Shown here: one piece after another, positions 6,053 through 57,218 of the stretch
Layout: each line of letters starts with the position of its first letter
Numbering within the stretch: the first letter of the stretch is position 1
NCBI GenBank assembly: GCA_964304625.1
Contig: OZ199838.1
Location: forward strand, 16,413,469 to 16,477,468
Source of the DNA: Kudoa neothunni
Lineage: Eukaryota; Animalia; Cnidaria
DNA: 64,000 bases
Direction: 5' to 3'
Made by a program: the position numbers and the translations under genes
The notes under the pieces: generated by a model
The model's database searches: none
Seen by the model: only the letters and a program-made list of their open reading frames with translations
Told to the model about the DNA's origin: nothing

Positions 6053-6066
6053 TTGTAAACTAAAAT

Positions 6067-7353: not shown

Positions 7354-12604
<5,251 letters not shown>

Positions 12605-12733: not shown

Positions 12734-12743
12734 CGCGCATGCG
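12734..12743. promoter_or_regulatory. NRF1-like palindrome CGCGCATGCG upstream of DUS2
   Basis: About 140 nt upstream of the DUS2 ATG; same motif class as upstream of ZNF207. Confidence 0.35.
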
Positions 12744-13875: not shown

Positions 13876-16783
<2,908 letters not shown>

Positions 16784-29647: not shown

Positions 29648-32588
29648 ATGAAATTTCAGTCATGCTCAGTTAGTTTATTAATTTCATTTTTATGTAATTT
29701 ATTTATGTTGATAATTTTCTTAAATTCCTATAGTTATTAATGTAAATCCGACCTCAGAAAATAAACCAGCAGTCCAAACTCCTACAAAAATACTTTCGTA
29801 TAACATTGTAGAAGGCCAAGTTCAATTGGATTTGACTGGGTCAGATTATGAAGGAGCTACGAAAAAATGCCTCATAAGAAGGGAGAAGGATGATGGAAAT
29901 GGATTTGATCAGATAAATAATTGTGTAACTAGCACTGTAACAGACAAATGTGTGCGTACTTGTGCAGGAAATGACAACAAATTAGCGTTTAGTGTGCTTT
30001 CACCAAGAACAAAATTTATCTATGTATATTCCGGAACTGAAGCTTCAGCAATCCAAGAAAAAATTAGAGGTGGAGGGGTTTTTGGACTTGCAATTCGTAA
30101 TCTAAATAAAATTATTTATTTTCATTAATTAAAAATAGCGCTCTTGGTGAATCCATCAATAACAGTGTCCATAGATACTAATACGAAAAAATTAACGCTT
30201 GCAGCCAAGACGTGTAAAAAAGTTGCCTGTCCTATTGTTTATAAAGGTATTCAATACGCGGCCGGTACAGTAGGGGCACATTGCGATTCTAATAACGGCG
30301 ACAACCAAGTTGACTTTGACCTTATGATTCCTCATTATGAAATGATATGCACAAATTACCCAAGCTTCTTTTATCATATGCCAAATCCGTACATGAAAGA
30401 AAATATTGACATATACAAACCCCAATATTACGTTACTCACAAAAGTGTTGACACTAAGACAAATTATGTCCTGAAATTTACCAACTCATTTCCTTCCGAA
30501 ATGTGTTTATTCAGTATTAAGGATGGTTCCGATACTGCTACAGAGTCAACGAACGCTTACGCATCAGTGTGCGGAGGAGGAACTGATAAACAGTGTTATG
30601 CACCTTGTGATAATGTCGAATTAACCCTTAATGCGTACAAACCAATCGTCAAAATATTAATTCAGACCAGACATCATAATTTAGAAGTAAGCAATGGAGA
30701 CATTGAAGGTTTTGACGAAAAAAAATATGGTATGATTTTTATTTAAAAAAGTCAGATATTCATTTATCATAGCTATCGAAGAGCCTGCCACTCCGAATAC
30801 ACTTTTTAGTGTACAAACGGATGTAGGGATTACGCTTAACCCTTCTCCATACAATAAAGATGGCGCAACTATAAAATTCAATACGTGCACTTTGAAGCAT
30901 TTTCCTGCCGATAAACTGAGACCAGGCGCTGGAACTAATACGCAATGCGCCAATAGCACGCCTTGTGGAAATGCCTGTGCAACACCTTCTGTTATACAGC
31001 AGTTGACTGCGGGAAAAGCTTACATAATTGAGATTACTCCAGAAAGCATAAATAATCACGCAAATTTTAAAGAATATCTATTTTTCAGAACAAGTAAGAG
31101 AAATACTCATTGCACCTATTGAATTTTTCTTAGAAGAATCTAGTTCATCAAACTTTGCTGTCACAGTTCCAATACCAACTGACGTGACTGCTGCAATTAA
31201 AGCGGTTGATGGTGACGTTGGATCAGCAACAACTGAACCGACCTGTTCCTATTACGTCAGTATAAAAGATAAAAACACGTTCGTAGAAGCAGAATGTGAA
31301 GACAGCAATCCATGTAGAGGATTTTGTAAAGACACCAAGAAGTTGATAAATCTAAACCCTAAAACAAACTACGATATTAAAGTCGTTTCACACAAAGACT
31401 ATGGAATCAAAATATTTGAAAATATTTCAACTAGTAAAATAATTTAAATTTAAGCTAATATAAATTATATTCTTTAGCTTGGTCAACCATGACCCTTTCC
31501 CAAAGATTCCTAGATAAAGGGTTTAAAGTGGCTGGAACTTTGACATCCGTTTATCCACAAGCAACATGTCACTATAAAATAAGAGAAAAAAACGGAGAGA
31601 CTCTAAAAGATGTTTATTCCTGTCCAGCAGTTGTCCCTCCGTCGCCGTCGGTCAGTCCAGCCACTGAAAATATTGCTGCTCCTCCTACATCTACTCAAAC
31701 GGAGGCAGCGCAAGAATCTAGGCTGGTCAGCGTTTCAAATTTGTCTGGAATAAAGATAGCAAGAGCAGTTAATGCAGAAGAAGAGAATTTGACATCCACT
31801 GAACCCGCCATTACTCAATCTATGTTTCCACCATGTAGCAAACCACCACTCTGCAGCAATATAATAATTAGTGATGGTTATGAGGCTAATAAAGAATACC
31901 AAGTATTGGTGACGGCTGTAGGTCGTTCAGAGGAAGTTACAATCGATATTCCTAAAAGTACTATAACAAAATTAATATAGAAATTTTCTAAATTGTCATA
32001 TAAATATAGATTCACTCCCAGAACTATCTCAAGATACGAACAAACAAATTACCGTTGTTATTGAGAGAGTAGGAGATACGTTAAAAATCACGTCATTGCT
32101 TCCAAAAGAAAAGGATGATAATTCAGTATGTCGATGGATACTGAGAGACATCACTGATGTTTCTCAACGAATAGTGAAAAAATGTGATTCCAGTAGAAGT
32201 AAAGTTTGCAAACTTCCAACTTGCAAATCATTTACTATCAAAGAGGTAAGTGATACCAATGATTATCACTTAACACTTATTCACTCCCGAGATCCCAATG
32301 TTAAAGGAATTGGAATAATAAAACGAGGTGACTAACAATTAATAATAATATCAATTATTATTATTATTATAATTAATAATTTAGGAGAGACCTCTAATCA
32401 ATCCAGGTAAAATTAATATTTTAATATTTAATTTATTATATTTTTAGGGCGAGCACTTCAATGTATTAAATTTTGAGTTGATATGTTGGAATAAGTTTTC
32501 ATTTAGGATTGTTGGAATCATTGTTCCATCCGTTATTGTTATTATAGGAGTAGGATTTTACTTTGGTTATTGGAAGAATAGAGGATAA
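29648..32588 (+). CDS. Variable surface protein, array copy 1: ~845-aa type I membrane protein with Cys-rich FN3-like modules (intact)
   Basis: Ten exons (about 29648-29693, 29734-30096, 30139-30729, 30773-31093, 31134-31433, 31478-31957, 32010-32327, two micro-exons of 22 and 15 nt, 32507-32588) splice to one 2538-nt frame. Signal peptide MKFQSCSVSLLISFLFI; TM and tail IVGIIVPSVIVIIGVGFYFGYW-KNRG*. Confidence 0.9.
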
Positions 32589-33311
32589 CTTCGATTAACT
32601 CAGTTAATCATTTGGAACATTTACATTAATTTTTATTAGTTTATAATTGAATATATTATAAATATTTGTAAATTTATTTACAAAAACTATATATTTTATT
32701 TGAAATATTGTTAGTATAATATTCGAAATTGATTGAAGTCTATCAATAAAATAATAAATGTATATTGACATAAATTAGCTGCGATAATTTTATCATTCCA
32801 TTATAAATGAAATCAATTGTATAACATTTAATAGGATAATTTAAAGCTTAAATTTTTTTCACGCAAATAATTTACAAGTTTATTCCTAAGGATTATTTTA
32901 ACAACACAAATACACTAAATTAAGATTTGTGTGTGATATCTCAGTAAAATTAGCATTAGTCTAGTTTTTATGTACTTTTATAATCCATTATAGATCTTGA
33001 GTATTTTGTTCTAAATTATTGAAAAGATTTCATTCGTAATTTTTGAAGTTTCATTTGTCGGACGAAATTAAGCTTGGTACATAAATGCGTGCAGTCTACT
33101 GATTAAGGGGAGATGATTGGGTTTAATAAGCCACTGATTGATGTTGAAAATTCAAAAATATATCAAAAATTAGAAAATAAAACGATCTTTGAATTCTATA
33201 ATAAATTAAAAAAGAATTGGAATAAGTAAATTTCATAAGTTTAAATCAAGGCCGAACCTAACTACCTTTCCGAATTGAATAACAAATTTTTAAGCATTGT
33301 AATTATTTTAT

Positions 33312-34819
33312 GGAAATGGCTATATCTTAGGTACCTGATAATCCGGTCGCGCTCAGACTATATCCCGGAGAATGAATATCTCTAAAAACCACTGCATATA
33401 TTTTGTTCAGATTTTAAATTTTATCTAATATTTACTTAATTTAATTTTTCGTAAGTATTAAAAAAATTTGCAGAAGAATAAGTTTTCAGTAGTGCAACCA
33501 TCCTAAGTCTATCAATATTAAGGTGTAATTATATTATATTTTTAAATTTTTTCGGTAAAAAAAGCATATTCCCTTTTTGAATTATTTAATATAAATAATT
33601 AATTCTTCGCTTAAAGTAATTTTAGCTTTCACTGTATACTTTCGGGTTAGACTGAAAGAGATGAATTAACATGTTTATATACGGAATATGGTTTATTTCT
33701 TGTGAAAATCTTTATATTGTCATAATAAAACGTGAATAATTAAAATTTCGATTATTACAAACATTACACTTGGTTTCTACGAAATCTTTTATATTTATCG
33801 GTGGGAAAGGCATATGAAATGAGGTTTTTAAACGTGAATCCTATAATAGAAAAGAATAAATAAAATTCTTCAGTTATTATTTGCAGGAAAAAACTCTTGG
33901 AAACAAAAAAATTCTAACAGAAGTTAAAATAAAAACAAATTTTTTGATGGTGATGGTTAATATTACTGAATTTTGTGGGGAACTTTTTTATAAGGCTATA
34001 AGTTCTATTAGCTTACTAGAATAAATATCTACAAATAGTGATGATGTTTATATCGTTCGTGCCCCCCAATAAATTTGATTATTTGTTGACAAATATATAA
34101 TTTACAATATAATATAGTTGAAGATGTGTGAAAGTATAGAAAAAGGAAATCTTTTATGATTTAATTTTTGATAATGAGAAAGAAGTGTCTCCTGTAGACT
34201 TAACATGGATGCCACTTATCAACAAGACAAAACCAGACATAAATAAATGAATTAAAACCCCATAAGGAACTAATAAATAATTGCAATAAAGCTGAAAATA
34301 GAATACAACAACCATTATTAAAAGTCAAAATATTATTATCGTTGTTGGATTTTTAAACCTCAAAATTCCATCGAAAGTAATGCCAATTGTAAGGCTAGAA
34401 AGAATTTATTTGTGAAGAGTTGTGAATATAAAAATATACAACAATAATTCACGACATCAATAAATAAAAAAATTCAATATGACATATTAAGTTTATTTTT
34501 TGTATATGGAAGCTGTTATATTTTATTATTTCTAACTCACATGATCAAGTCATAATATATTCCATATCTTTTAGGAATACAAAATAACACGAGAAAAAAA
34601 GAGAGTGAAAATTTCAATAATTGTTGTCTTATAAATGATAATTATACTTAAATATTGATGGACTCAGAATGGTAGTTGCTCTACTGAAAATTTATTCTTC
34701 TGCAAATTTTTTTTATACTTACGAAAAATTAAGTTAAATAAATATTAGATATGTAGAATGTGAACAAAATATATGCAGTAGTTTTAGAGATGTTCATTCT
34801 CTGAGATATAGCAACTTTC
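33312..34819. mobile_element. Non-autonomous long-TIR DNA element (Merlin-like GG termini) in spacer 1-2
   Basis: About 200-bp inverted repeats (33312-33530 vs 34630-34819) and an imperfect 8-bp TSD TATTTTAT/TTATTTAT. The homologous site in spacer 2-3 (about 40510) is empty. Confidence 0.65.
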
Positions 34820-34831
34820 TTATTTATTCTA

Positions 34832-35700
34832 ACCCTCGAGCAAAATGGGGTACAAATAGGGTCCAAACGATATTAGGATGTATTTTCTTTGATTAATTTT
34901 TAATTCCCAGTTCTAATGTTTTTCTTATTTTTCTATAAATCATAGATCTATAAAAAATGTTATTAATATAACTTCGAAATTTCTTAATCGAATATTAAGA
35001 TAAAAAAATCTTCCAAAGAAAATGGCGTCTTCATTGATTCAAGATGTTTATTGAAAATTTTTGAACAGAAAAACGTAATTATAATATTATTAAGAGAAAA
35101 ATTTGTTGTAAAAATTATTTTATGCCTAAAATGAATAACCCAAAAAATATACACTCAGGTGCGGATATACATATTTTTTGTCAGGTCATGGGTTTTTTTT
35201 GAAAATAAAGGCTGTAGTATTGACATCCATGACTATGATACCCCAAGTCTGTTTTATTTAACAGAAACTATGGATCAGAACAAAAATATTTTGCGTTGGT
35301 CGATACTGATGACTCCCTTATTTATAAAAATGGACGTTCGTAGGGTTAGACGGATCCATCGAAAACGCAGACGCCTGCTGAAAATATGATCAGCTTTAGT
35401 CAGGATGTGATTCATTATAATATGCAGTGGATTATTTTAAAAAAGATTGCCTCTGAGTTTTCTGAAGCGTTAAGAATAAATAAAATAATCGCGAATGCAA
35501 AAATAAATGCATCGAATTGAAAACATCGGGAAAAATTTTCAAATGAAAATTAGTATTGCAGAATGATAACAAAAAATGAGATTTATTATGTGCACTCGTT
35601 CCCAAGATAAAAAACAAACCTAGAAGACGACTTGTGTATGGCTCCTTGCTGCGAAGAACATTCAGTTTTTCTTACAAAAGCTTTGACTTATTATTTTTCG
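34832..35700 (+). mobile_element. piggyBac-like end/remnant carried in the array spacers (also about 40515-40800 and 52254-53100)
   Basis: TAACCC start followed by a GGGGTnCAAATAGnnnCC subterminal palindrome (clearest at 40770: GGGGTCCAAATAGACCCC). Degenerate ORF follows. Confidence 0.4.
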
Positions 35701-36833
35701 ATTTACGTTGTTTGTTGAACTCGTGTATGATTCACTTGAATTATTTTAACTAACATGTAATGGTAGCATTCTCACCCTTTTTTAACAACAATTATCTTAA
35801 TACAAATCCTTACTTCATGTATCAATATCTCCTTATATTTTAATTTCGTCGCTACAATATTCTTTTAATTTTAGGGTGTAAAATAATTATTCAAATATCT
35901 TAAATGTGGCGGGGGTTACGTTCTAATTTATTATATTGATGTACTCTGTAAAATTAAGTTTATTCGAAATTCGAATAATCATAAAAACCCGTAGAATCTA
36001 ATCGGTATTATAATTAAATTATTACTAAGAGTAAGAGATTTTTTATGGCAGTATGCAAAGTATTTAAAATCAATCAATTCAGTTTTAATGATTCTTAAAG
36101 TTTTTGACTTTAGCATTACCGCGCGTATGTGATGAAATATTTAATGTGTAATTATCTTTGAAAGCGTACGTGTTTTGCAAAAAAACTTCTTGGTAATGTA
36201 GAAAAATATTATGCAAATAAGTTTATACAAAAACACTAAGTTCTATATGGGCTATTTTACTCGGGGGTATCCGATTTTGGTATACTCTGATGGTTAAAGT
36301 AGAGGAACTTCATAGGTTTTTCTGTGATAAAAATACGCGAATAGCGCTTGACAAGGAATTAACAACATAACTGAGAATTAGTCACCACAAATAAAGGAAA
36401 AATATCGAAATTATATTGTTTCTTCTTTGTTCAAATATTGTAAAATTATTAAAATTAAAATAAATTTTAGTTACACTGTATGGAAATTATTTATAAATGT
36501 GTTATTTTATTTTTTACCTGTATAAGAAAATTTTTAGCCACCAAAGTTTAACGAACTTAATTATAAAAAAAGTAAGGTTAGATGATCTCAAAAATGTTAA
36601 ACGTTTACATAAATTCTTTAATCTTTATTTGAGAGAATTTTGTTTAAAAATATTAATTATAAATTTATCAGGAAAAATAAGTTCAAAAAAATAAAATACA
36701 AAATTTTTCAATCATGTGAATATATATAAAATTGGATTTATCGATGTATCAAATCCTATTGTTATGTTCATATGAATATCAATAGTTAAATCGAAATATA
36801 TAGCTTAATCTGATTTACTCTCTATACCAAAAA

Positions 36834-39781
36834 ATGAAAACTCAATTAGTCTCAGTTATTTTATTGATTGCATTTGCATGTAATTTATTTATATTGATTA
36901 TTTTATTAAATTCGTTTAGTTGTTAATATAAACAGCGCTGTTGAAACCAAACAAGCACCTCAAATTCCTACAAAAATACTTTCGTACGACATTGTAGAAA
37001 GTAAAGTCCATTTGGTTTTGACTGGATCAGATTATGAAACGGATTCAAAAAAATGTCTCATAAGAAAGGAGAACGATAATGGAAATGGATTTGATCAGAT
37101 ACATCCTTGTGTAGCTAGCGATGGAACCGATGGGACTGACAAGTGTGTACGCGCTTGTTCAGGAAATGACAATAAAATAGCGTTTAATGTGCTTTCACCA
37201 AGAACAAGATTTATCTATGTATATTCCGGAGCGCAAGCTTCAGAGATTCAAGCCAAAAATAATGGCGGAGAGGTTTTTGGACTAGCTATTCGTAACTTGA
37301 ATAAAATTATTCTTTTTTAATTTGAAGTAGCGCTCTTGGTAAACCCAAGAATCACGATATCCACAGATGCAACATCCAAAAAATTAACGCTTGCAGCCAA
37401 GACGTGTAAAAATGTTGACTGTCCTATTGTTTATAAAGGTATTCAATACGCGGCTGGTACAATGGGAGACAATTGCGATTCTGATAACAGCAATAACAAA
37501 GTTGATTTTGACCTTATGATTCCTCACTACGAGATGATATGTACGAATTACCCAAGCTTCTTTTATCATATGCCAAATCCGTACATGAAAGAAAATATTG
37601 ACATATACAAACCACAATACTACGTCACTTACAAAAAAGATGACACTGCTAAGAAAAATTATATCCTAAAATTCACCAACTCATTTCCTTCCGAAATTTG
37701 TTTATTCAGTATTAAAGACGCGTCAAGTTCTGCAACTACCAATCCTTACGAATCTGTGTGTGGGGGTGAAGCTGATAAAATGTGTTTTGCACCTTGTGAT
37801 ACTGTTGAATTAACACTTACTGTTTCCAAACGAATCGTTGAAATATTAATTCAGACTAGACATCATAATTCAAGAGAAAATGATGGAAACATTGAGGGCT
37901 ACAAGGAGAAAAAATATGGTATGATTTTTATTATGAAAATTTAGATATTTATTTATTATAGCTATCGAGGAGCCTGAAGCCGCGAATACACTTTTTAGTG
38001 CGCCAACAACTGCGGGTATTACACTTAGCCCTTCTGCATACAACCCAACCACTGGTGCCGATACAGTCAAGTTCAGTAAATGCGCTTTAAAATATTTTCC
38101 TGCGGACAAACTCAGAAAAGCTCAAGGGGACGATTTGCAATGTTCCGAAAGTGCTGCCTGTGGAGATGTTTGTGAAACAGCGTCTGTTATACAGGAGCTG
38201 ACTGCAGGGAAAGCATACATAATTGAGATCACTCCGACAACTATATCTGATCACACAGAATTTAAAGAATACCTATTTTTCAGAACAAGTAAGGAATATA
38301 TTCATAACACTCATTAAATTATTTTTAGAAGAATCTGGTACATTAACCTTCGCCGACACAGCACCCACAGCAACCGACGTGACTGCTGCAATTAAAGCGG
38401 TTGATGGTGACGTGGTAAAAACAGTAACAACTGAACCGACTTGCTCATATTATGTAAGTATAAAAGATAAAAACACGTTCGTAGAGGCAGAATGTGAAGA
38501 CAGCAACCCATGTAGAGGATTCTGTAAAGATACTAAGAAATTGATAAATCTAGACCCTAAAACAAACTACGATATTAAAGTTGTTTCACACCAAAACTAT
38601 GGAATCAAAATATTTGAAAATATTCCAACTAGTAAAAAATTTTTTAATTTAAGATAATATAAATTATATTTGTTAGCTTGGTCAACCATGACTCTTTCCT
38701 ATAGATTCCTAGATAAAGGGTTTAAAGTGGCTGGAACTTTGACATCCGTTTATCCACGAGCAATATGTCACTACAAAATAAGAGAAAAAGACGGAGAGAC
38801 TCTAAAAGATGTTTATTCCTGTCCAGAAGTTGTCCCTCCGTCGCCGTCGGTCAGTCCAGTCACTGAAGATATTGCTGCTCCTCCTTCACCTACTCAAACT
38901 CAGGAAACGAACCAACCTACGCCGGTTAACAGTTCAAATTTGTCTAGAATAAAGATAGCAAGAGCAAGTAATGCAGAAGAAGAGAATTCGACATCCACTG
39001 AACCCGCCATTACTCAATCTAAGTTTCCACCATGTAGCAAACCACCACTCTGCAGCAATATAATAATTAGTGATGGTTATGAGGCTAATAAAGAATATCA
39101 AGTATTGGTGACGGCTGTAGACCGATCAGAAGAAGTTACAATCAATATTCCTAAAAGTACTATAACAAAATTAATATAGAAATTTTCTAAATTGTCATAT
39201 AAATATAGATTCACTCCCAGAACCATCTCAAGATACAAACAAACAAATTACGGTAGTTATAGAGAGAGTAGGAGATACGTTAAAAATCACGTCATTGCTT
39301 CCAAAAGAAAAGGATGATAATTCAGTATGTCGATGGATACTGAGAGACATCACTGATGTTTCCCAACGAATAGTGAAAAAATGTGATTCCAGTAGAAGTA
39401 AAGTTTGCAAACTTCCAACTTGCAGATCATTCACTATTGAGGATGTAAGTGATACAAATGATTATCATTTAACTCTTATTCACTCCCGAGATTCCAATGT
39501 TAAAGGTGTTGGAATAATAAAACGAGGTAACTAACAATTAATAATAATAATAATTATTATAATAATTAATAATTTAGGAGAGACCTCTAATCAATCCAGG
39601 TAAAAGTTATATTTTAATGTTTAACGTATTACATTTTTAGGGCGAGCACCTCAATGTATTAAATTTTGGGTTAATATGTTGGGATAAGTTTTCATTTAGG
39701 ATTGTTGGAATTATTGTTCCAGTCGCTATTGTTATTGTAGGGGTTGGATTTTACTTTGGTTATATGAAGAATAAAGGATAA
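36834..39781 (+). CDS. Variable surface protein, array copy 2 (intact)
   Basis: Same 10-exon structure as copy 1. Signal MKTQLVSVILLIAFA; C-terminus IVGIIVPVAIVIVGVGFYFGYMKNKG*. Confidence 0.9.
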
Positions 39782-41196
39782 CTTTGATTAACTCAGTTAA
39801 ACATTTGGAACATATTACATTATTTCTTATTAGTTTATAATTAAATATATTATAAATATTCCTAAATTTATTTACCAGTAATTATCTATTTTATTTGAAA
39901 AATTGTTAGTATAATATTCGATATTAATTTAAGTCTATCAATAAAATAATAAATGTATATTGGCAAAATAAGTTGTGATAATTTTATCAATCATTTATGA
40001 ATGAAATTAAGTTTATAATATTTAATAGGATAATTTGAAGGTATAAAATTTTTGTTCACGTAAATGGTTTATAAATTTATTCCTAAGGATTATTAAATCA
40101 ACACTAACACTCTAAATTAAGATTTATGTGTAATATCTCAATAAAAGTTGAATTAATCTAGTTTTTATATACTTTTGTAAATCATTATAGATCTCGAGTA
40201 TTTTGTTCCAAACTTATTGAGGGAAGGTTTAAGTATTATTAATTTTTCTGAGCTTTATTTGTCAGAGACAATTTTGGGTGGTGCACAAAAGTGTGCTTTC
40301 AGCTTATTTAAGGAGTGATTATAGCCAGTAAACTACCAATTATTACTGAAAATTCCAATATCTATCTACAGAATTTGAAAATAAAACAAATCTATAAATT
40401 ATTGAACAATCTTACAATGATTCGGGAGAATAAAATTTCATTTGTTTAAGTCAAAACCAAACATAACAACCTTTCTAAATTGAATAACCGATTATTTGGA
40501 CATTATAGTTATTTTAACTCCCCCCCCCCCCCCCCGAATTAGATAGGTTCCATTTGGACCCCAAACGATATTATGATGCATTTTTCTCTGATTCATTTTT
40601 AATTCCCAGCGCTATATCTCAATTATTTTTCTTTCGAATATAATTCTATACAAAAATATTATAGAAATAATTTTTTAATTTCTTAGCAAAAATTAAAAAT
40701 AAAATAATCTTCCGATGAAAATGGGTCCTTAATTTACCCCATATTTTATTTAACCTTCCAAGCATTTTTGGGGTCCAAATAGACCCCAGACCCACTTTAA
40801 CCTCAATTCATTGCTTACTGAAAACGTTAAATTGGCGGTAATGAAGGAGTATACGCCTCACCGAATTCGACCTTTTGTACATGTCCTACATTCCTGATTT
40901 TTATTTCATTGTTTAAAACACATTTTTTAAATATTGAGAGAAGTGAAAAAATACACAAAATCAAAATTTTGAAAATACCCGAAAATATTCAATCGGGAAA
41001 TTTTGGTACTCACGCACGGGCATGCGCATAAATACTTTTCATCAATTTTTGAACTTTCTAAACATTCAAAAATATCTGAAACAATTTAAATCAATAAGTT
41101 AGTCTTTACTCTCTCAGAATTTTGTACAGTTCGTCAAGTAACATGAGATTTTGAAATGTTATCAACAATGCATCGTAGAATATATATATATATATA

Positions 41197-43155
41197 CAGT
41201 CGAGATTGGATATTGCGTGATTCGGTATTTCGTAATTTAAGATTTTCGATATGAAGATATTTACATTGGGACTTAATTTTAGAGTTATATCATTACTTTA
41301 TTTATTAAATTAATTATATAGAATAAAAATGAAAAAATATTTTTTCTACGTGCCTCTGATTTAGTATTGCGTAACGTAAATTACCAACGTGACTCGATAT
41401 TGCGTGATTTCATCTTCAATATGTCCAGGGAGCAGCGTGAAATTTCTGAGAAAATTAGAATAATACAATATTACAATTCAATAAAATCAATAAAGGGCGC
41501 AAAGAAAATGACGGTTGAAAAGTTTAAACTTAATGGTATGATTATTTTTAATCGATAACAATTTATTTTTTAAAGAACATTCAACGCTTGGCAGGATTCT
41601 TTCTCATGAAACCAAGCTGAAAAATTCAGATGTTGCAGGGAATAGGAAGAGGCATTCAAATGGAAGATTTATCAACATAGACGAAGAAGTTTATGAATGG
41701 TTTATCAAAAAACGCACCAATGGTCACATTTCTGGTGACGTAATACTTGAAATAGCCACCATAATTGCCAGAAAGAATGAATTCAAAATTTTAAAGCAAG
41801 CAGGGGTTTAAAAAAGGTTTGGAATCATTTTCAAGCATTTTCATGGTGAAGCTGCAAGCACTAACGTCGAGTCTATTGATTCGTGGATCTATGAAAATAA
41901 AAATTTGATAAGCATATACAGCCCAAAAAATATAATCAATATTGACGAAACTGGTTTGTTTTATGAGAAATTACAGAACAGCAGTTATTTATTAAAAGAA
42001 GAAAATGACATTAAAGGTAAAAAGCTATCGAAAAAAAGAATAACGATCTTGGTATCGTGCTCTTTAAGCGGAGAAAAGTTGCCCTTAGTCGTAATTGGGA
42101 AATACCAAAACCCCAGGTGCTTCAAGGGAGTAAAAAATTTACCTTATGAGTATTATGCCCAAAAAAATTCTTGGATGACATCTGCTATTTTTTTTCCAGA
42201 TACTGAAAAAATTAAATTTTAAAATGGAGTTAGAACAACGAAAAATACTAATCTTGCTGGACTAATGTCCAGCACATCCCAAAGATATCACTTGCTTTAG
42301 TAATATAAAGTTTTTCTTCTTACCTAAAAATACTACAAGTGTTTTACAGCCACTCGATCTCGGAGTGATTAATTGTCTTAAAAGTAGATTAAACAAATAT
42401 TGTGTAGCCATATGGCATTATGTGATGATTCGTTAAATAATAAATTTACATTACTTAATGCAATTTTGACACTCCAAGAAGCATGGAACAGTATTCCACC
42501 TGAAATTATTGTCAACTATTTTAAAAAGTCGGGCATATTTAGCGAAAGTAAAAGCTAATGCGAACTTCAAAAATTAATCCATTATCATAGGAGATACAGA
42601 GACGGAAACAAATGATAAAATTTTCGAAGATGAACAGAGTATAAATATACAATGAAATTTTAATATTTTTATAGTCGAGGAGGAAACATGGGAGACCAAC
42701 TTTGATGATGATAACGGCGATGTCTTATATCAACAGTGAATCCAATTCAGAACGAAATCGAATCTGATGAGGAAGAATCAAAAGTTCCAATAAAAATATA
42801 AAGCACGCCGTAAGTACATTAAGGAAGGTGTTTATTCAGGAAGAACCACCTGGACTCATCGATCTTTATCCGATAATGGATCGAATTTTAAAAATATCAT
42901 CTCAAAAATGGCACCAAACTAAAATTACTTCATTTTTTCATAAAAATTAATAATTTTGTCTGGTTGAGTTATATAAAATTCCTTATATTTATTTTATTTC
43001 ACTAGCAATGATTTAAAGTAGGAAAAACGCATAAAACAAGTTTAAATCGAATATTTTTACAAGTGCACATGTACGTGACTCGATATTGCGTAAAACCTTT
43101 TTATTGCGTAGTTTTTCCTTGGTTCTAAAAATTACGCAATATTGAATCTCGACTG
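41197..43155 (+). mobile_element. pogo/Tigger element nested in the Merlin element; transposase disrupted
   Basis: TIRs CAGTCGAGATTGGATATTGCGTGATT / AATTACGCAATATTGAATCTCGACTG flanked by TA. CENP-B-type HTH (IDEEVYEWF) and DDE_1 motifs NIDETGLFY, RITILVSC, LPKNTTSVLQPLDLGVI, with stops and frameshifts. Confidence 0.9.
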
Positions 43156-43612: not shown

Positions 43613-43646
<34 letters not shown>

Positions 43647-44038
43647 GTAGGATATATGGAGTTACAGTTTTCAAATCTACATGATAAAATTGATTTTCTA
43701 TATTCTAGTATATATATATATATATATATATATATTACAATTGTTTGTGCAATATTTATGTATTGATGCTATAATGTTAAATATGCATATAGTATGAACA
43801 AATTTTATGTTATTAATTGGATCCTTTGCAATATAAATTTAATGTGAATTAATCATCCAAACCTAAGGTAAAACATTTTAAACTTTCCTCAAAAGTAAAT
43901 TCTTTATTTTTAAGATGTTTCTGTAATTAACGGTGCTATCTTTTGATAAACATAACAATTGATATATATATATATACACTCTATTCACATAAAAAGTAAA
44001 TACTAAATAATATCGAAGAAAAAGTAATAAATTTCAGG

Positions 44039-45181: not shown

Positions 45182-45790
45182 CTTACCACATTAGTTAAAT
45201 AGCGTCAAAAATGTAACGATTTTTTAACGCGAATCTTACGTTAGTGACAAATTTTAAAACTTAAACTTTATTGGGTAAATAAACGGTAGAACAATTATAT
45301 TAAACTAAAATTCGACTCTTAATAAAAAGTCCATGAATCGATTATATTAATAAAATTATTTTTAATTTTGAAAAACGCGGTAAATATGTCAGGGTGTATT
45401 CATCATCATATTCACTAAATATTTTACATCGGTATTACGTCAAACAGTTTTCGAGCAAAACAATTAAATATGATCTTGCAAGGATAAATAATCACTTTCT
45501 TTATAAATTTCTGGGAGAGTGAAGACTTATTTATCGATTTAATTTGGTTTGGATATTTTTGAGTGTTTAGAAAGTTCCCAAGTCGTTGAAAAATATTTAT
45601 GCGCATATCCGAGCGCGAGTACCGAATTTTTCCGAGTACGTATTTTTGGGTATTTTTAAAATTTTGATCTTGTATATTTTCTCACTTCTCTCTATATTTA
45701 AAAATGTGTTTTAAATAATGAAATCAAAATCGGGAATGTAGGACATGTGCAAAAGGTCGAATTTGATGAACCGTATACTTCCCCATTACC

Positions 45791-46010
45791 TGCACATGAA
45801 GGTAAACCTTTTTGTTTGGCTAATTAATTTCTCTTCATGATTATCGTGAAGACGCATACTACAATCTTTTTGCTTCGTATTCACTCAATCCATTCGTATA
45901 CCTCTTCATCAACAGAATGAAATTGTCCTGCACACAAATAATTTCAATTTTTAGGTTCCAAAAACATTTATAGGTTTTGATGATTTTATTTTTCATCTCT
46001 AGGATGCCAT
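45791..46010 (-). mobile_element. Second pogo/CENP-B HTH fragment
   Basis: AGQFHSVDEEVYEWIE*IRSKKI parallels GRFINIDEEVYEWFIKKRTNG of the element at 41197. Confidence 0.45.
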
Positions 46011-47170: not shown

Positions 47171-50127
47171 ATGAAATTTCAGTCAGTTTCAGTTAGTTTA
47201 TTAATTTCATTTTTATGTAATTTATTTAGGTTGATTATTTCATTAATATCTTATAGTTATTAATACTAATCTCGCTACTGAAAATAAACCAGCAGCTCAA
47301 GCTCCTACAAAAATACTTTCCTACAACATTGTAGAAAGGAAAGTCCATTTGGTTTTGACTGGATCAGACTATATAACGGATTCAAAAAAATGTCTTATAA
47401 GAAAAGAGAAGAATGATGGAAATGGATTTGAACAGATACATCCTTGTGTAGCTAGCGATGAAACCGATGGGAATGACAGATGCGTACGTGTTTGTGCTGG
47501 AAGTGACAACCAAATAGAGTTTAATGTGCTTTCACCAAGAACAAGATTTATCTATGTATATTCCGGAGCGCAAGCTTCAGGTATCAAAGATAAAGATACA
47601 GGTGGAGAGGTTTTTGGACTTGCAATTCGTAATCTAAATAAAATTATTTATTTTCATTAATCCAAATTAGCGCTCTTGGTGAATCCAAAAATCACGATAT
47701 CCACAGATGCACCATCGAAAAAATTAACGCTTGCAGCTAAGACATGTAAACAAGTTGCCTGCCCCATTTTTTATAAAGATATTCAATACATGGCCGGTAC
47801 AGTAGGAGCAAACTGCGATTCTGATAATAGCAACAACCAAGTTGACTTTGACCTTATGATTCCTCATTATGAAATGATATGCACAAATTACCCAAGCTTC
47901 TTTTATCATATGCCAAATCCGTACATGAAAGAAAATATTGACATATACAAACCACAATACTACGTCACTTACAAAAAAGATGACACTGCTAAGAAAAATT
48001 ATATCCTAAAATTCACCAACTCATTTCCTTCCGAAATTTGTTTTATTCAGTATTAAAGATGCGTCAAGTTCTGCAACTACCAATCCTTACGAATCTGTGT
48101 GTGGGGGGTGAAGCTGATAAAATGTGTTTTGCACCTTGTGATACTGTTGAATTAACACTTACTGTTTCCAAACGAATCGTTGAAATATTAATTCAGAATA
48201 GACATCATAATTCAAGAGAAAATGATGGAAACATTGAGGGCTACAAGGAGAAAAAATATGGTATGATTTTTATTATGAAAATTTAGATATTTATTTATTA
48301 TAGCTATCGAGGAGCCTGAAGCCGCGAATACACTTTTTAGTGCGCCAACAACTGCGGGTATTACACTTAGCCCTTCTGCATACGACCCAACCACTGGTGC
48401 CGATACAGTCAAGTTCACTACTTGTACATTAAAACATTTTCCCGCTGACAAACTCAGAACAACCCAAGGAGAAGAAACGAAATGCGGAAATAATGATGCA
48501 TGCCAAAATAATTGTGGAACAGCGTCTGTTATACAGGGACTATCTGCAGGGAAAGCATATATAATTGAGATTACTCCAGGAAACATTCAAAATCTTTCAG
48601 GTTTTAAAGAATACTTGTTTTTCAGAACAAGTAAGGAATATATTCATAACACTCATTAAATTATTTTTAGAAGAATCTGGTACATTAAACTTCGCCGACA
48701 CAGCACCCACACCAACCGACGTGACTGCTGCAATTAAAGCGGTTGCTGGTGACGTTGGATCAGCAACAACTGAACCGACCTGTTCCTATTACGTCAGTAT
48801 AAAAGATAAAAACACGTTCGTAGAAGCAGAATGTGAAGACAGCAATCCATGTAGAGGATTTTGTAAAGACACCAAGAAGTTGATAAATCTAAACCCTAAA
48901 ACAAACTACGATATTAAAGTTATTTCACACAAAGACTATGGAATCAAAATATTTAAAAATATTCCAACTAGTAAAAAAATTTGAATATAACCTAATATAA
49001 ATTATATTTGTTAGCTTGGTCAACCATGACTCTTTCCCATAAATTCCTAGATAAAGGGTTTAAAGTGGCTGGAACTTTGACATCCGTTTATCCACGAGCA
49101 ATATGTCACTACAAAATAAGAGAAAAAAACGGAGAGACTCTAAAAGATGTTTATTCCTGTCCAGAAGTTGTTCCTCCGTCGCCGCCGGTCGGTCCAGTCA
49201 CTGAAGATATTGCTGCTCCTCCTACACCTACTCAAACTCAGGAAACGACAGAATCTAGGCTGGTCAGCGTTTCAAATTTGTCTGGAATAAAAATAGCAAG
49301 ATCTGGCAATGTAGAAGCAACTGATGCCACACCCACTGAACCCACTACTACTCAATCTATGTTTCCACCATGTAGCAAACCACCACTCTGCAGCAATATA
49401 ATAATTAGTGATGGTTATGAGGCTAATAAAGAATATCAAGTATTGGTGACGGCTGTAGACCGATCAGAGGAAGTTACAATCAATATTCCTAAAAGTAACA
49501 TATAAAGGAATTAATATAGATATTTTCTAAATTGTCATATAAATATAGATTCACTCCCAGAACCATCTCAAGATACAAACAAACAAATTACGGTAGTTAT
49601 AGAGAGAGTAGGAGATACGTTAAAAATCACGTCATTGCTTCCAAAAGAAAAGGATGATAATTCAGTATGTCGATGGATACTGAGAGACATCACTGATGTT
49701 TCTCAACGAATAGTGAAAAAATGTGATTCCAGTAGAAGTAAAGTTTGCAAACTTCCAACTTGCAAATCATTTACTATCAAAGAGGTAAGTGATACCAATG
49801 ATTATCATTTAACGCTTATTCACTCCCGAGATTCCAATGTTAAAGGTGTTGGAATAATAAAACGAGGTAACTAAGACTTAATAATAATATCAATTATTAT
49901 TATTATTATAATTAATAATTTAGGAGAGACCTCTAATCAATCCAGGTAAAATTAATATTTTAATATTTAATGTATTATATTTTTAGGGCGAGCACCTCAA
50001 TGTATTAAATTTTGAGTTGATATGTTGGAATAAGTTTTCATTTAGGATTGTTGGAATCATTGTTCCAGTCGCTATTGTTATTGTAGGGGTTGGATTTTAC
50101 TTTGGTTATATGAAGAATAGAGGATAA
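47171..50127 (+). CDS. Variable surface protein, array copy 3 (two +1 indels in exon 3: pseudogene or assembly error)
   Basis: Same exon structure. Extra T (about 48041) and extra G (about 48105) in homopolymers relative to the otherwise near-identical copy 2 tract. Confidence 0.85.
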
Positions 50128-50129
50128 CT

Positions 50130-53100
50130 TTGATTAACTCAGTTAACATTTGGAACATATTACATTAATTTTTATTAGTTTATAATTTTATAATTGAATA
50201 TATTATAAATATTTGTAAATTTATTTACCAATAATTATTCATTTTATTTGAGGACCACTAAAAAATAAATTTACATCGGCAGAATAAGTTGTGATAATTT
50301 TATCATTTCATTATAAATGAAATCAATTGTATAATTTAATGTTATTAATTTATGATCACATAAATAATTTGTAAACTCATTCATAAGGATTATTTCAACA
50401 ACACAAATACACTAAATTAAGATTTGTGTGTGATATCTCAGTAAAATTAGCATTAGTCTAGTTTTTATGTACTTTTGTAATCCATTATAGATCTTGAATA
50501 TTTTATTACAAAATTATTGAAAAAATTTAATTCGTAATTTTTGAGGTTTCATTTGTCGTACAAAATTACATGTGGTGTATATATGCGTACTGTCTATTGA
50601 TTGATATCACAATTCCAAAATATATCAAAAAATTATAAAATAAAACGATCTTTGAATTCTTTAATAAATTAAATATGAATTGGAATAGTTAAATTTCATA
50701 AGTTTAAATCAAGACCGAACCTAACTACCTTTCCGAATTGAATAACAGATTTTTAAGCCTTGTAATTGTTTTATGGAAGTGGCTATATCTCAGGGAATGA
50801 ATATCTCTAAAATTACTGCATATATTTTTTTCATATTTAACATATTATCTAATATTTACTTAACTTAATTTCTCATAAGTATTAAAAATATTTGCAGTTG
50901 AATAAGTTTTCAGTAGCGCAACCATCCTTAGTCTATCAATATTAAGGTGTAATTATATTATATTTTTAAATTTTTCGATAAAAAAGCATATTCCCTTTTT
51001 GGATTATTTAATATAAATAATTAATTCTTCGCTTAATGTAATTTCGGCGTCCATTGTATACTTTCGGGTTAGAATGTTAAAGATGAATTCTAGCATGTTT
51101 ACATATAGAATATAGTTTATTTCCTGCGAAGATCCTTATATTGTCATAATAAAATATGAATAATTAAAATTTTGATTATCTCAAACATTACACATGGCCT
51201 CTAAAAATATTTTTATATTCATCGGTGGAAACACGTATGAAATAAAGTTTTTAAATGTTGGTCCTATAATAGAAAATAATGAATAAAATGCTTTAGTTAA
51301 TATTCGCAGGAAAAAACTCTTGGAAACAAAAAAATTCTAACAGAAGTTAAAATAAAAACAAATTTTTTGATGGTGATGGTTAATATTACTGAATTTTGTG
51401 GGGAACTTTTTTATAAGGCTATAAGTTCTATTAGCTTACTAGAATAAATATCTACAAATAGTGATGATGTTTATATCGTTCGTGCCCCCCAATAAATTTG
51501 ATTATTTGTTGACAAATATATAATTTACAATATAATATAGTTGAAGATGTGTGAAAGTATAGAAAAAGGAAATCTTTTATGATTTAATTTTTGATAATGA
51601 GAAAGAAGTGTCTCCTGTAGACTTAACATGGATGCCACTTATCAACAAGACAAAACCAGACATAAATAAATGAATTAAAACCCCATAAGGAACTAATAAA
51701 TAATTGCAATAAAGCTGAAAATAGAATACAACAACCATTATTAAAAGTCAAAATATTATTATCGTTGTTGGATTTTTAAACCTCAAAATTCCATCGAAAG
51801 TAATGCCAATTGTAAGGCTAGAAAGAATTTATTTGTGAAGAGTTGTGAATATAAAAATATACAACAATAATTCACGACATCAATAAATAAAAAAATTCAA
51901 TATGACATATTAAGTTTATTTTTTGTATATGGAAGCTGTTATATTTTATTATTTCTAACTCACATGATCAAGTCATAATATATTCCATATCTTTTAGGAA
52001 TACAAAATAACACGAGAAAAAAAGAGAGTGAAAATTTCAATAATTGTTGTCTTATAAATGATAATTATACTTAAATATTGATGGACTCAGAATGGTAGTT
52101 GCTCTACTGAAAATTTATTCTTCTGCAAATTTTTTTTATACTTACGAAAAATTAAGTTAAATAAATATTAGATATGTAGAATGTGAACAAAATATATGCA
52201 GTAGTTTTAGAGATGTTCATTCTCTGAGATATAGCAACTTTCTTATTTATTCTAACCCTCGAGCAAAATGGGGTACAAATAGGGTCCAAACGATATTAGG
52301 ATGTATTTTCTTTGATTAATTTTTAATTCCCAGTTCTAATGTTTTTCTTATTTTTCTATAAATCATAGATCTATAAAAAATGTTATTAATATAACTTCGA
52401 AATTTCTTAATCGAATATTAAGATAAAAAAAATCATCCAAAGAAAATGGCGTCCTCATTGATCCAAGATGTTTATTTAATATTTTTGAACAGAAAGACTT
52501 AATTATAGTATTATTAAGAGAACAATTTGTTGTAAAAATTATTTTATGCCTAAAATGAATAACCCAAAAATATACACTCAGGTGCGGATATACATATTTT
52601 TTGTCAGGTTATGGGTTTTTTTAATTAAAGGCGGTAATATTGACATCCATGACTATGATACCCCAAGTCTGTTTTATTTAACAGAAACTATGGATCAATA
52701 TATAAAGGAGATTTTGTGTTGGTCGATACTGATGATTCCCTTATTTATAAAAATGGACGTTCGTGGGGCTAGACGAATCCATCGAAAACGCAGACGCCTC
52801 CTGAAAATATGATGTGTATTAGCCAGGATATGATTCATTATAACATCCAAAGGATTATTAAAAAAAGGTTTCCTCTGAGTTTTCTGAAGCGTTAAGAATA
52901 AATAAAATAATCACGAATGCAAAAATAAATGCATCGAATTGAAAACATCAGGAAAAATTTTCAAGTGGAAATTAGTATCGCAGAATGATAACAAAAAATG
53001 AGATTTATTATGTGTACTCGTTCCCAAGATAAAAAAACTGACCTAGAACACGACTTGTGTATGGCTCCTTGCTGCAACGAACATTAAGTTTTTCTTGCAA

Positions 53101-54260
53101 AAGCTTTAAGACATTATTTTTCGATTTACGTTGTTTTTTGAACTCGCGTATAATTCATTTGAATTATTTTAACTAACATGTAATGGTAGTATTCTCATCC
53201 TTTTTTAACAACAATTATCTTAATACAAAGCTTTACCTCATGTATCAATGTCTCCTTATATTTTAATTTCGTCGCTACAATATTCTTTTAATTTTAGGGT
53301 GTTAAATAATTATTCAAATATCTTAAATGTGGCGGGGGTTACGTTCTAATTTATTATATTGATGTACTCTGTAAAATTAAGTTTATTCGAAATTCGAATA
53401 ATCATAAAAACCCGTAGAATCTAATCGGTATTATAATTAAATTATTACTAAGAGTAAGAGATTTTTTATGGCAGTATGCAAAGTATTTAAAATCAATCAA
53501 TTCAGTTTTAATGATTCTTAAAGTTTTTGACTTTAGCATTACCGCGCGTATGTGATGAAATATTTAATGTGTAATTATCTTTGAAAGCGTACGTGTTTTG
53601 CAAAAAAACTTCTTGGTAATGTAGAAAAATATTATGCAAATAAGTTTATACAAAAACACTAAGTTCTATATGGGCTATTTTACTCGGGGGTATCCGATTT
53701 TGGTATACTCTGATGGTTAAAGTAGAGGAACTTCATAGGTTTTTCTGTGATAAAAATACGCGAATAGCGCTTGACAAGGAATTAACAACATAACTGAGAA
53801 TTAGTCACCACAAATATAGGAAAAATAGGTCAAATATCAAAATTATATCGTTTCTTCTTTGTTCAAATATTGTAAAATTATTAAAATTAAAATAACTTTT
53901 AATTACACTATATAGAAATTATGTATAAGTGTGTTATTTTATTTTTCACCTGTATAGGAAAATTTTTAGCCACCAAAGTTTAACGAATTTAATTATAAAA
54001 CAAGTAAGCATAGATGCTCTCAAAAATGTTAAACGTTTACTTAAATTCTTTAATCTTTATTTTAGAGAATTATGGTAAAATGTATAAATTATAAATTTAT
54101 CAGGAAAAATAAATTCACAAAATCAAAGTATGCAATTTTCCAACAATATCAATATATCACATTGTATATATCGATGTATCAAATCCTATTGTTATGTTCA
54201 TATGAATATCAATAGTTAAATCGAAATATACAGTTTAATCTGATTTACTCTCTGTAGCAA
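50130..54260 (+). repeat. Spacer 3-4, a segmental duplicate of spacer 1-2 (about 32590-36830)
   Basis: Colinear over about 4.1 kb; 51306-52435 reads as near-identical to 33883-35010. Confidence 0.9.
50775..52242. mobile_element. Duplicate of the long-TIR non-autonomous element; a related truncated end starts at 57387
   Basis: Termini GGAAGTGGCTATATCTCAG ... CTGAGATATAGCAACTTTC; same insertion site as 33312-34819. Confidence 0.65.
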
Positions 54261-54263
54261 AAA

Positions 54264-57218
54264 ATGCAAACTCAGTTAGTCTCGGTTAGTTTATTGATTG
54301 CATTTGCATGTAATTTGTTTATATTGATTATTTTATTAAATTCTTGTAGTTATTAATACAAATCCTACTACGGAAAATAAACTAGCACCCCAAACTCCTA
54401 CAAAAATACTTTCGTATGACATTGTTGAAAGTAAAGTGTTGTTGGTTTTGACCGGATCAGATTATGAAGGAGCTACGAAAAAATGCCTCATAAGAAAAGA
54501 GAACGATAGTGGAAATGGATTTGATCACGTAAGTACATGCGAGAATAGAGATACACAGGTTGAGACAGGCAAGTGTGTACGTGCTTGTTCAGGAAATGAC
54601 AATAAAATAGCATTTAATGTGCTTTCACCCAGAACAAAGTTTATCTATGTATATTCCGGAACAGATGCCGCACAAATTCAAAATAGTAATAACGGTGGGG
54701 ATGTTTTTGGACTTGCTATTCGTAATTTAAATAAAATTATTCTTTTTTAATTGAAAATAGCGCTTTTGGTGAATCCATCAATAACAGTGTCCATAGATAC
54801 TAATACGAAAAAATTAAAATTGGCAGCCAAGACATGTAAAAGAGTTGACTGTCCCATTTTTTATAAAGGTATTCAATACGCGGCCGGTACGGGACAGGGA
54901 ACATGTGATACTGATAACATCGCCAACCAAGTTGACTTTGACCTTATGATTCCCCATTATGAGATGAAAGCACGAATTACCCGAGTTTCTTCTATCAAAT
55001 GCCAAATCCATATATGAAAAAAAATATCGACATATACAAACCCCAATACTACGTTACTTACAAAAAAGATGACGCTGATAAGAAAAATTATATCCTAAAA
55101 TTCACCAACTCATTTCCTTCCGAAATATGTTTATTCAGTATTAAAGACGCTTCGAGTGCTGCTACAGGATCTACAAAGAATTATGCATCAGTGTGCGGAG
55201 GAGGAACTGATAAAAAGTGTTTTGCACCTTGTGATACTGTTGAATTAACACTAGCTGAGTCTAAACCAATCGTCGAAATATTAATTCAGACTAGATATCA
55301 TAATTTAGATACAAGCGGTAGTAGCATTGAGGGCTATAAACAGAAAAAATATGGTATTGTTTTTTAAAGAAAATGTATCTATTCATTTATTATAGCTATC
55401 GAAGAGACTGACGCTACGAATACACTTTTTAGTACACAAACGGATGTAGGGATTACACTCAACCCTTCTCCATACAACACAGCCACCGGTACCAATTCAG
55501 TAAAGTTTGTTACGTGTGATTTAAAGCATTTTCCTGCCGATAAAATCAGAAAGACTACAGGGGATGTTTTGCAATGCAACGGTATCGATTCTTGTGGAAA
55601 TGCTTGTGCTACTCCTTCTGCTATAAAGGGACTATCTGCAGGGAAAGCATATATAATTGAGATTACTCCGACAGCCATAAATAATCATGCTGATTTTAAA
55701 GAATACCTGTTTTTCCGAACAAGTAAGGAATATATTCATAACACATATTAAATTATTCTTAGAAGAATCTGATTCATCAAACTTCGCCGACACAGCACCC
55801 ACACCAACCGACGTGAGTGCTGCAATTAAAGCGGTTGATGGTGACGTAGAAACAACAGCAGAAACTGAACCAACATGCTCATATTACGTCAGTATAAAAG
55901 ATAAAAACACGTTCGTAGAGGCAGAATGTGAAGACAGCAACCCATGTAGAGGATTCTGTAAAGATACTAAGAAATTGATAAATCTAGACCCTAAAACAAA
56001 CTACGATATTAAAGTTGTTTCACACCAAAACTATGGAATCAAAATATTTGAAAATATTCCAACTAGTAAAAAATTTTTTAATTTAAGATAATATAAATTA
56101 TATTTGTTAGCTTGGTCAACCATGACTCTTTCCTATAGATTCCTAGATAAAGGGTTTAAAGTGGCTGGAACTTTGACATCCGTTTATCCACGAGCAATAT
56201 GTCACTACAAAATAAGAGAAAAAGACGGAGAGACTTTACAAGATGTTTATTCCTGTCCAGAAGTTGTCCCTCCGTCGCCGCCGGTCAGTCCAGCCATTGA
56301 AGATATTGCTGCTCCTCCTTCACCTACTCAAACTCAGGAAACGAACCAACCTACGCCGGTTAACAGTTCAAATTTGTCTAGAATAAAGATAGCAAGAGCA
56401 AGTAATGCAGAAGAAGAGAATTCGACATCCACTGAACCCGCCATTACTCAATCTAAGTTTCCACCATGTAGCAAACCACCACTCTGCAGCAATATAATAA
56501 TTAGTGATGGTTATGAGGCTAATAAAGAATATCAAGTATTGGTGACGGCTGTAGACCGATCAGAAGAAGTTACAATCAATATTCCTAAAAGTACTATAAC
56601 AAAATTAATATAGATATTTTCTAAATTGTCATATTAATATAGACCCACTCCCTGAACTATCTCAGGATACAAACAAACAAATTACGGTAGTTATCGAGAG
56701 AGTAGGAGATACGTTAAAAATCACGTCATTGCTTCCAAAAGAAAAGGATGATAATTCAGTATGTCGATGGATACTGAGAGACATCACTGATGTTTCTCAA
56801 CGAATAGTGAAAAAATGTGATTCCAGTAGAAGTAAAGTTTGCAGACTTCCAACTTGCAGATCATTCACTATTGAGGATGTAAGTGATACCAATGATTATC
56901 ATTTAACGCTTATTCACTCCCGAGATTCCAATGTTAAAGGTGTTGGAATAATAAAACGAGGTAACTAACAATTAATAGTAATATTAATTATTATTATTAT
57001 AATTAATAATTTAGGAGAAACTTCGAATCAATCCAGGTAAAACTAATAAAATAATGTTTAATGTAATATATTTCTAGGGCGAGCACCTCAATGTATTAAA
57101 TTTTGAGTTGATATGTTGGAATAAGTTTTCATTTAGGATTGTTGGAATCATTGTTCCAGTCGCTATTGTTATTGTAGGGGTTGGATTTTACTTTGGTTAT
57201 ATGAAGAATAAAGGATAA
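54264..57218 (+). CDS. Variable surface protein, array copy 4 (one -1 indel at about 54969)
   Basis: Same exon structure. GAG ATG AAA GCA CGA lacks the T of the conserved Cys codon in EMxCTNYPSFFY. The C-terminal half is nearly identical to copy 2. Confidence 0.85.

What the first reader, a model, noticed from the sequence alone, without database searches (positions are those of the whole stretch)
29648..57218. Tandem array of an unrecognised variable surface protein family (candidate antigenic-variation or receptor system)
Seen: four co-oriented 10-exon genes (ATGs at 29648, 36834, 47171, 54264) encode ~845-aa proteins with a signal peptide, about seven Cys-rich modules, a Pro/Thr-rich loop, a conserved TM helix and a tiny basic tail (KNRG/KNKG). 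The ORF track misses both ends. I do not recognise the family. Known: a variable Cys-rich ectodomain with an invariant TM and minimal tail is the layout of parasite coat antigens such as Giardia VSPs (analogy only, no homology claimed). Inference: a lineage-specific variant surface antigen, adhesin or allorecognition family.
Basis: partly seen in the sequence, partly recalled or inferred. Interest (0 to 1): 0.92.

Follow-up and report, generated by a model that had tools for sequence, protein, structure and literature searches.

The report
Kudoa FN3 surface-protein gene repertoire
A fish-muscle parasite related to jellyfish, known for losing most of its genes, devotes roughly one gene in twenty to a single apparently undescribed family of variable cell-surface proteins, a good but untested candidate for how it evades or binds its host.

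Summary
Four co-oriented 10-exon genes are real. The genome matches the Kudoa neothunni (Myxozoa) assembly. The modules are not VSP-like (3.3% Cys, no CxxC). They are four-cysteine beta-sandwiches on phase-1 exons; module 5 is fibronectin type III by fold. The array holds 11 copies. About 240 loci were seen genome-wide and about 250-300 are estimated, some 5% of the published gene count. Neighbouring copies are gene-conversion mosaics. The variable-tip/constant-stalk pattern holds only within subfamilies: family-wide, distal exon 3 is more conserved (52-58%) than the membrane-proximal module (37-51%). Apparent positive selection did not survive a recombination control. Homologues with the same exon order occur, in several copies, in three other samples. 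No paper, Pfam family or named protein describes the family. No expression data exist, so antigenic switching is untested. Best reading: a host-facing variable surface repertoire. The scan found this family before at other loci of this genome.

The parts
29648..32588 (+). Copy 1, intact, 845 aa. Exons 29648-29693, 29734-30096, 30139-30729, 30773-31093, 31134-31433, 31478-31957, 32010-32327, 32385-32406, 32448-32462, 32507-32588
29648..29693 (+). Exon 1: predicted signal peptide (Lys n-region, hydrophobic core)
   Evidence: hydropathy 2.2-3.1 over 11 residues in 12 sequences; no dedicated predictor run
29734..30096 (+). Exon 2: module 1, four Cys; highly variable loops; fold inferred from the pattern, not modelled
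   Evidence: no Pfam or Atlas match
30139..30729 (+). Exon 3: module 2 (Ig C2-set-like, low confidence) plus module 3 (FN3-like), joined by an aromatic linker; the most conserved exon family-wide
30773..31093 (+). Exon 4: module 4, the most variable module within subfamilies
31134..31433 (+). Exon 5: module 5, FN3 fold with four Cys
   Evidence: pLDDT 80.6; Z 9.3 over the whole domain to FN3 domains
31478..31957 (+). Exon 6: module 6 carrying a 70-aa Pro/Ser/Thr-rich insert (31624-31833) between its 2nd and 3rd Cys
31753..31764 (+). (I/V)-A-R motif inside the variable insert, kept in 23 of 23 copies aligned; candidate protease-processing site (inference)
32010..32327 (+). Exon 7: membrane-proximal module 7; 94% identical within the local subfamily but 37-51% in distant subfamilies
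32385..32588 (+). Micro-exons 8 and 9 (22 and 15 nt, short stalk) and exon 10 (TM helix, 4-residue basic tail)
32590..36833 (.). Spacer duplicated at 50127-54263 (90.6% over 4.2 kb): copies 1+2 and 3+4 come from a two-gene segmental duplication
36834..39781 (+). Copy 2, intact, 850 aa
40824..45803 (.). Nested DNA transposon relics between copies 2 and 3 (long-TIR element holding a DDE_1 element and an ISXO2/Merlin-like transposase)
47171..50127 (+). Copy 3, frameshifted in exon 3 in the assembly (two extra bases in homopolymer runs); pseudogene or assembly error, unresolved
54264..57218 (+). Copy 4, frameshifted in exon 3 (one base missing near 54968); probable pseudogene, not tested with reads

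Best explanation
A repertoire of about 250-300 type I membrane proteins of the myxozoan Kudoa neothunni. Each is a rod of seven cysteine-stapled FN3/Ig-like beta-sandwiches on a TM anchor with no signalling tail. Shown: architecture, fold of module 5, family size, tandem arrays on all three chromosomes, birth and death of copies, and gene conversion that shuffles loop-sized patches between neighbours and homogenises the 3' half. Inferred: the proteins sit on the parasite surface facing fish or annelid tissue, and the many variants let different stages or cell lineages show different epitopes, so the family works as a variable surface coat that blunts acquired immunity. The conserved module 2-3 core would serve a shared structural or binding role, and the insert in module 6 may be a processing or shedding site.
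For: About 240 loci seen against 5,316 predicted proteins (PMC12239612). Most copies kept intact under purifying selection: exon dN/dS 0.23-0.59; 24 of the 30 nearest copies show no internal lesion. Variation sits in loops rather than strands. Mosaic copies, p<=0.001 in exons 2, 3, 4 and 6. Tail of only four residues. Stage-specific antigen change is reported for Kudoa thyrsites and other myxozoans (PMC8481699).
Against: No expression, localisation or antibody data. Positive selection signals are matched by a neutral simulation on mosaic trees. The distal exon 3 is the most conserved exon family-wide, unlike a pure decoy coat. No expression site or shared 3' flank motif across subfamilies. Kudoa spends long inside muscle cells, partly hidden from antibodies.
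Confidence: 0.48

Rival explanations
1. Adhesin or receptor repertoire: each subfamily binds a different host ligand (tissue or host recognition in fish and annelid), with FN3 loops used as binding surfaces; many members are co-expressed and immunity is secondary.
For: The fold is that of animal adhesion molecules. The variable patches lie in loops. A conserved aromatic core in exon 3. The architecture is kept in distant samples. Deep subfamilies at about 55% identity persist.
Against: No ligand known; the 4-residue tail cannot signal alone; conversion scrambles copies, which fits poorly with fixed specificities.
Confidence: 0.27
2. Largely neutral expansion: one structural surface protein multiplied by tandem and segmental duplication in a transposon-rich genome; copies are redundant and loop variation reflects relaxed constraint.
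For: No robust positive selection. About a third to a half of codons in distal exons fit omega near 1. 6 of the 30 nearest copies are broken. Transposons lie between copies.
Against: Several hundred mostly intact copies in a genome that has otherwise lost most gene families; several paralogues in each of three other samples.
Confidence: 0.15
3. Self/non-self recognition between parasite cells or clones, like Hydractinia Alr proteins (homophilic Ig/FN3-like ectodomains).
For: Cnidarian host lineage; Ig-like plus FN3-like domains, mostly one per exon, clustered with pseudogenes, as in Alr (PMC9546547).
Against: Seven modules rather than 1-3 Ig plus one ECS; no ITAM/ITIM tail; about 250-300 loci on three chromosomes rather than one complex; no sequence link found.
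Confidence: 0.1

Closest known systems
Fibronectin type III domain receptors and adhesion molecules (contactin, DCC/neogenin, NCAM, LAR, Dscam FN3 arrays)
   Same: Module 5 has the FN3 fold (Z 9.3, rmsd 3.1, 91 aligned); tandem modules on phase-1 exons; type I topology
   Different: 7-18% identity; below the Pfam fn3 cut-off; four Cys per module; no Trp in modules 1-5; no signalling tail; hundreds of paralogues
Diplomonad VSPs and the VSP-like genes of the myxozoan Sphaerospora molnari (10.64898/2026.02.11.705288)
   Same: Signal peptide, large ectodomain, one TM, very short conserved tail, large family in a fish parasite
   Different: 3.3% Cys and no CxxC/CxC (VSP: >10%, >5 motifs); beta-sandwich fold; ten exons; different tail; about 250-300 copies against 18 in S. 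molnari and about 110 in diplomonads; switching not shown
Hydractinia Alr allorecognition proteins (PMC9546547)
   Same: Cnidarian single-pass proteins with unusual Ig and FN3-like domains, exon-per-domain layout, clusters with pseudogenes
   Different: Domain number and order, no ITAM/ITIM tail, not confined to one complex, no homology detected
Toxoplasma SRS and Plasmodium 6-Cys surface families (from own knowledge, not tested here)
   Same: Large families of Cys-stapled beta-sandwich surface proteins in tandem arrays with gene conversion, serving both adhesion and immune interplay
   Different: Different fold and lineage; GPI anchor rather than TM; analogy only
Insulin-receptor FnIII-2 insert domain (from own knowledge, analogy only)
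   Same: A disordered insert with a basic motif inside the penultimate FN3 domain
   Different: No L, CR or kinase domains; cleavage not shown; insert absent in one distant homologue

Membership tests
VSP (Giardia/Spironucleus, S. molnari VSP-like) | More than 10% cysteine (at least 5% in the search pipeline) | tested here: not met
   3.3-3.4%; criteria
VSP (Giardia/Spironucleus, S. molnari VSP-like) | More than 5 CxC or CxxC motifs | tested here: not met
   0 CxxC, 0 CxC
VSP (Giardia/Spironucleus, S. molnari VSP-like) | Signal peptide, single TM, short conserved tail | tested here: met
   hydropathy and tail alignment
VSP (Giardia/Spironucleus, S. molnari VSP-like) | S. molnari tail signature [KR]X[KR]XK[KR] | tested here: not met
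   tails end K-N/S-R/K-G/S-stop
VSP (Giardia/Spironucleus, S. molnari VSP-like) | Mutually exclusive, switching expression | not testable with these tools
   no RNA holder; RNA run X10 gave 0 reads
Fibronectin type III superfamily | Beta-sandwich of FN3 topology | tested here: met
   module 5:
Fibronectin type III superfamily | Same fold in all seven modules | tested here: inconclusive
   module 3 FN3-like Z 6.5 and module 2 C2-set-like Z 7.0 on a pLDDT 62 model; modules 1, 4, 6, 7 not folded; profile-profile between modules not significant
Fibronectin type III superfamily | Pfam PF00041 above the gathering score | tested here: not met
   16 bits against 25; 17 of 35 members at E<=0.1, best 7.7e-4
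Fibronectin type III superfamily | Leu-x-Pro...Tyr motif before strand F | tested here: met
   L73 nearly invariant and Y79 invariant in alignment A1
Fibronectin type III superfamily | Core Trp of strand B | tested here: not met
   no Trp in modules 1-5
Hydractinia Alr | 1-3 V/I-set Ig domains followed by one FN3-like ECS | tested here: not met
   seven modules, with FN3 folds at positions 3 and 5
Hydractinia Alr | Cytoplasmic tail, often with ITAM/ITIM | tested here: not met
   4-residue tail, (three Alr tails are also under 14 aa)
Hydractinia Alr | Sequence homology and allele-specific homophilic binding | not tested
   no Alr sequence was available by reference; none appeared

The most novel reading that the evidence does not exclude
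The family is a true antigenic-variation system in an animal parasite: a conversion-diversified archive of about 250-300 FN3-scaffold coat genes of which each parasite cell or nested cell generation expresses one or a few and switches, built from an animal adhesion fold and shared by a wider clade of marine myxozoans.
Probability: 0.2. Interest if true: 0.9.

Novelty: new variant of a known kind. Interest (0 to 1): 0.62.

Why it matters
Myxozoans cause major aquaculture losses and have no vaccine. Antigen change during infection has been reported, but its genes are largely unknown (PMC8481699). A family holding about 5% of the genes of a strongly reduced genome, and not mentioned in the genome paper, gives a concrete target: one stage-resolved or single-cell RNA-seq experiment would show whether it switches. 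The conserved module 2-3 core and the TM end also offer diagnostic or vaccine candidates. It would be one of very few variant-surface repertoires known in an animal parasite.

Tried and rejected
Sphaerospora molnari as source: rejected (40.17 Mb in 40 contigs, against 4 contigs and the TAAACC telomere). VSP membership: rejected. Positive selection: M1a/M2a tests were significant in exons 2-4, but neutral simulations on mosaic block trees reached the observed statistic in 1/12, 3/12 and 1/12 runs, so it is not claimed. 'Invariant stalk': true only within subfamilies. PDB sequence searches gave nothing credible; the NMDA-receptor and Plasmodium CSS hits are short and weak. ESM Atlas feature search on exon 2 gave only chance-level FG-GAP hits. 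Profile comparison between modules was not significant. No shared 3' flank motif across subfamilies; no Rfam match. Run accessions of the homologue samples are in no paper, so their species are unknown.
Full report
Observation. The window holds four co-oriented genes with ATGs at 29648, 36834, 47171 and 54264 and nine short AT-rich GT-AG introns at shared positions. Copies 1 and 2 give 845 and 850 aa. Copy 3 has two extra bases in homopolymer runs of exon 3 (48041-48044, 48103-48108) and copy 4 lacks one base near 54968, so both are frameshifted in the assembly. Contigs from three runs of one sample match copy-3-specific 5' stretches with no differences. At 48041 most depth lacks the extra base, as paralogues would, with a residue of about single-copy depth in two runs; the second site shows no indel. 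This is inconclusive. Introns 1-7 are all phase 1 and introns 8-9 phase 2. The spacer between copies 1 and 2 is 90.6% identical to that between 3 and 4, so the four arose by a two-gene duplication.

Organism. The genome is 40,260,978 bases in 4 contigs. An earlier scan note suggested Kudoa neothunni, which I tested. The published assembly is 40.2 Mb with N50 12.0 Mb, three chromosomes plus a mitochondrial contig, 30.4% GC, median intron 49 nt and one (TAAACC)n telomere (PMC12239612). The only such array here lies at 12.04 Mb on contig 2. The paper predicts 5,316 proteins, had almost no parasite RNA, had about sevenfold k-mer coverage, and never mentions fibronectin or antigen. The identification rests on these matches, not on a sequence comparison.

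Protein. Each copy has a hydrophobic leader, seven modules with four Cys each, a short stalk on two micro-exons, one TM helix and a four-residue basic tail. Cys content is 3.3-3.4% with no CxxC, so it is not a VSP by the criteria in the S. molnari preprint. Pfam fn3 hits only below its cut-off. The exon-5 model (pLDDT 80.6) aligns over the whole domain to FN3 domains, best Z 9.3, and nearly all of the top 50 are FN3 domains. The exon-3 model is weaker (pLDDT 62): residues 1-81 resemble C2-set Ig domains (Z 7.0) and 89-196 FN3 (Z 6.5), both in the range that may mean only a common arrangement. Modules 1, 4, 6 and 7 are inferred from Cys spacing and exon phase. Module 6 carries a 70-aa Pro/Ser/Thr-rich insert with an (I/V)AR motif kept in all 23 copies aligned; a processing site is a guess. 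As the operators required, all searches and folds were run exon by exon by reference; the joined spliced protein was never sent to a search or fold tool, so no full-length search or model exists. Spliced models were built only inside scripts, with X at breaks.

Family size. A motif pattern matched 236 times against 19 for its control. Counting by hand, the lists give about 203 distinct loci, adds about 25 and about 13. The third list was about 78% covered by the first two, which gives about 250; the lists are correlated, so 250-300 is my estimate. Exons 3, 5 and 7 keep similar spacing in distant copies, so the architecture is general. Copies lie in arrays on all three chromosomes; the local array has 11 copies over about 120 kb. 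Of the 30 nearest copies, 6 carry internal frameshifts or stops.

Diversification. In the ten intact copies of the local subfamily, amino-acid identity is 69, 79, 66, 85, 83 and 94% for exons 2 to 7; dS falls from 0.41-0.59 to 0.12-0.22 along the gene and dN/dS stays at 0.23-0.59. A second array on contig 2 shows the same trend, and its introns do too (0.71-0.80 for introns 2-4, 0.86-0.96 for 5-9). Since silent sites follow the gradient, it reflects homogenisation of the 3' half rather than protein constraint alone. Incompatibility tests show mosaicism in exons 2, 3, 4 and 6 (p<=0.001), nearest neighbours change along the gene, and identical runs of up to 345 nt are shared by different pairs. 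Loops vary more than strands (p 0.02 and 0.003). Site models favoured a class with omega 2-6 in exons 2-4, but neutral simulation on mosaic trees reproduced such values (12 runs per exon), so positive selection is unproven. Between subfamilies the order reverses: exon 3 is 52-58% identical, exon 5 about 41-57%, exon 7 about 37-51%. The most conserved part family-wide is thus the distal module 2-3 unit.

Range. Searches of 1.8 and 5.8 billion proteins returned only unnamed exon-sized fragments, then generic fn3 proteins; the length filter of the second tool hides full-length kin. The eleven fragments traced come from three samples, each with several paralogues. Their contigs show the same module order, phase-1 introns of 26-41 nt and, in one, the same micro-exon phases and the TM-end motif YFGYWK; one lacks the insert and one ends after module 5. 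A neighbouring nucleolar gene in one sample is only 30% identical to its counterpart here, so that sample is a different species, probably another myxozoan (inference; unnamed).

Mechanism. Shown: architecture, one fold, copy number, conversion, turnover. Inferred: surface display and role. A tail too short to signal, hundreds of mostly intact variants and loop-focused, recombining variation fit best a host-facing repertoire that varies the parasite's antigenic surface (0.48). An adhesin or ligand-binding repertoire is the main rival (0.27) and may overlap with it. Neutral expansion (0.15) and Alr-like self recognition (0.10) are less likely. Stage-specific antigen change is reported in K. thyrsites and other myxozoans (PMC8481699), but nothing here shows switching: no listed holder is RNA and the RNA run laid gave no reads, which is no test.

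Novelty. Five literature searches found no description. Variable surface families are known in parasites and now in S. molnari, and FN3 is a common fold; this combination and scale appear undescribed. I rate it a new variant of a known kind, interest 0.62. The scan has already reported the family from other loci of this genome. New here: the recombination control that removes the selection signal, the conserved module 2-3 core, the insert motif and the broken copies.

Noticed in passing
window 40824-45803: Nested transposon relics: outer arms of about 300 nt (83%), an inner DDE_1 (pogo/Tigger-like) element with short arms near 41197-43155, and an ISXO2/Merlin-like transposase at 44039-45046.
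   Followed up: partly
window 59314-62462: MULE transposase with a FLYWCH finger (arms 60606-60643 and 62160-62197) inside a second pair of 140-nt inverted arms.
   Followed up: partly
window 33358-33532, 34638-34817, 50777-50956, 52061-52240, 57431-57555: A repeat of about 180 nt in both orientations in the spacers; MITE-like.
   Followed up: no
window 6066-24784: Housekeeping genes flank the array on the left: a C2H2 zinc-finger protein, dihydrouridine synthase, MCM7 and PheRS beta.
   Followed up: partly
L031 1349-3470 (G000:C2 about 5.426-5.428 Mb): The only SSU rRNA copy found covers just model positions 1158-1823; its 5' part is replaced by AT-rich DNA with a 114-aa ORF holding two C2H2-like fingers. 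It recalls an rDNA-inserting R2-clade retrotransposon (own knowledge; untested).
   Followed up: no
L038 1-1002: A homologue in another sample appears to go from module 5 straight to the TM helix and has a long Glu/Lys-rich insert in module 5: module number and insert position vary between species.
   Followed up: partly
window 29487-29647 and equivalents: About 160 nt upstream of the ATG is conserved among the four copies; possible shared promoter, or just recent duplication.
   Followed up: no
G000:C3 35000-460000: A dense cluster of at least 25 family members lies at the start of contig 3, possibly subtelomeric.
   Followed up: no
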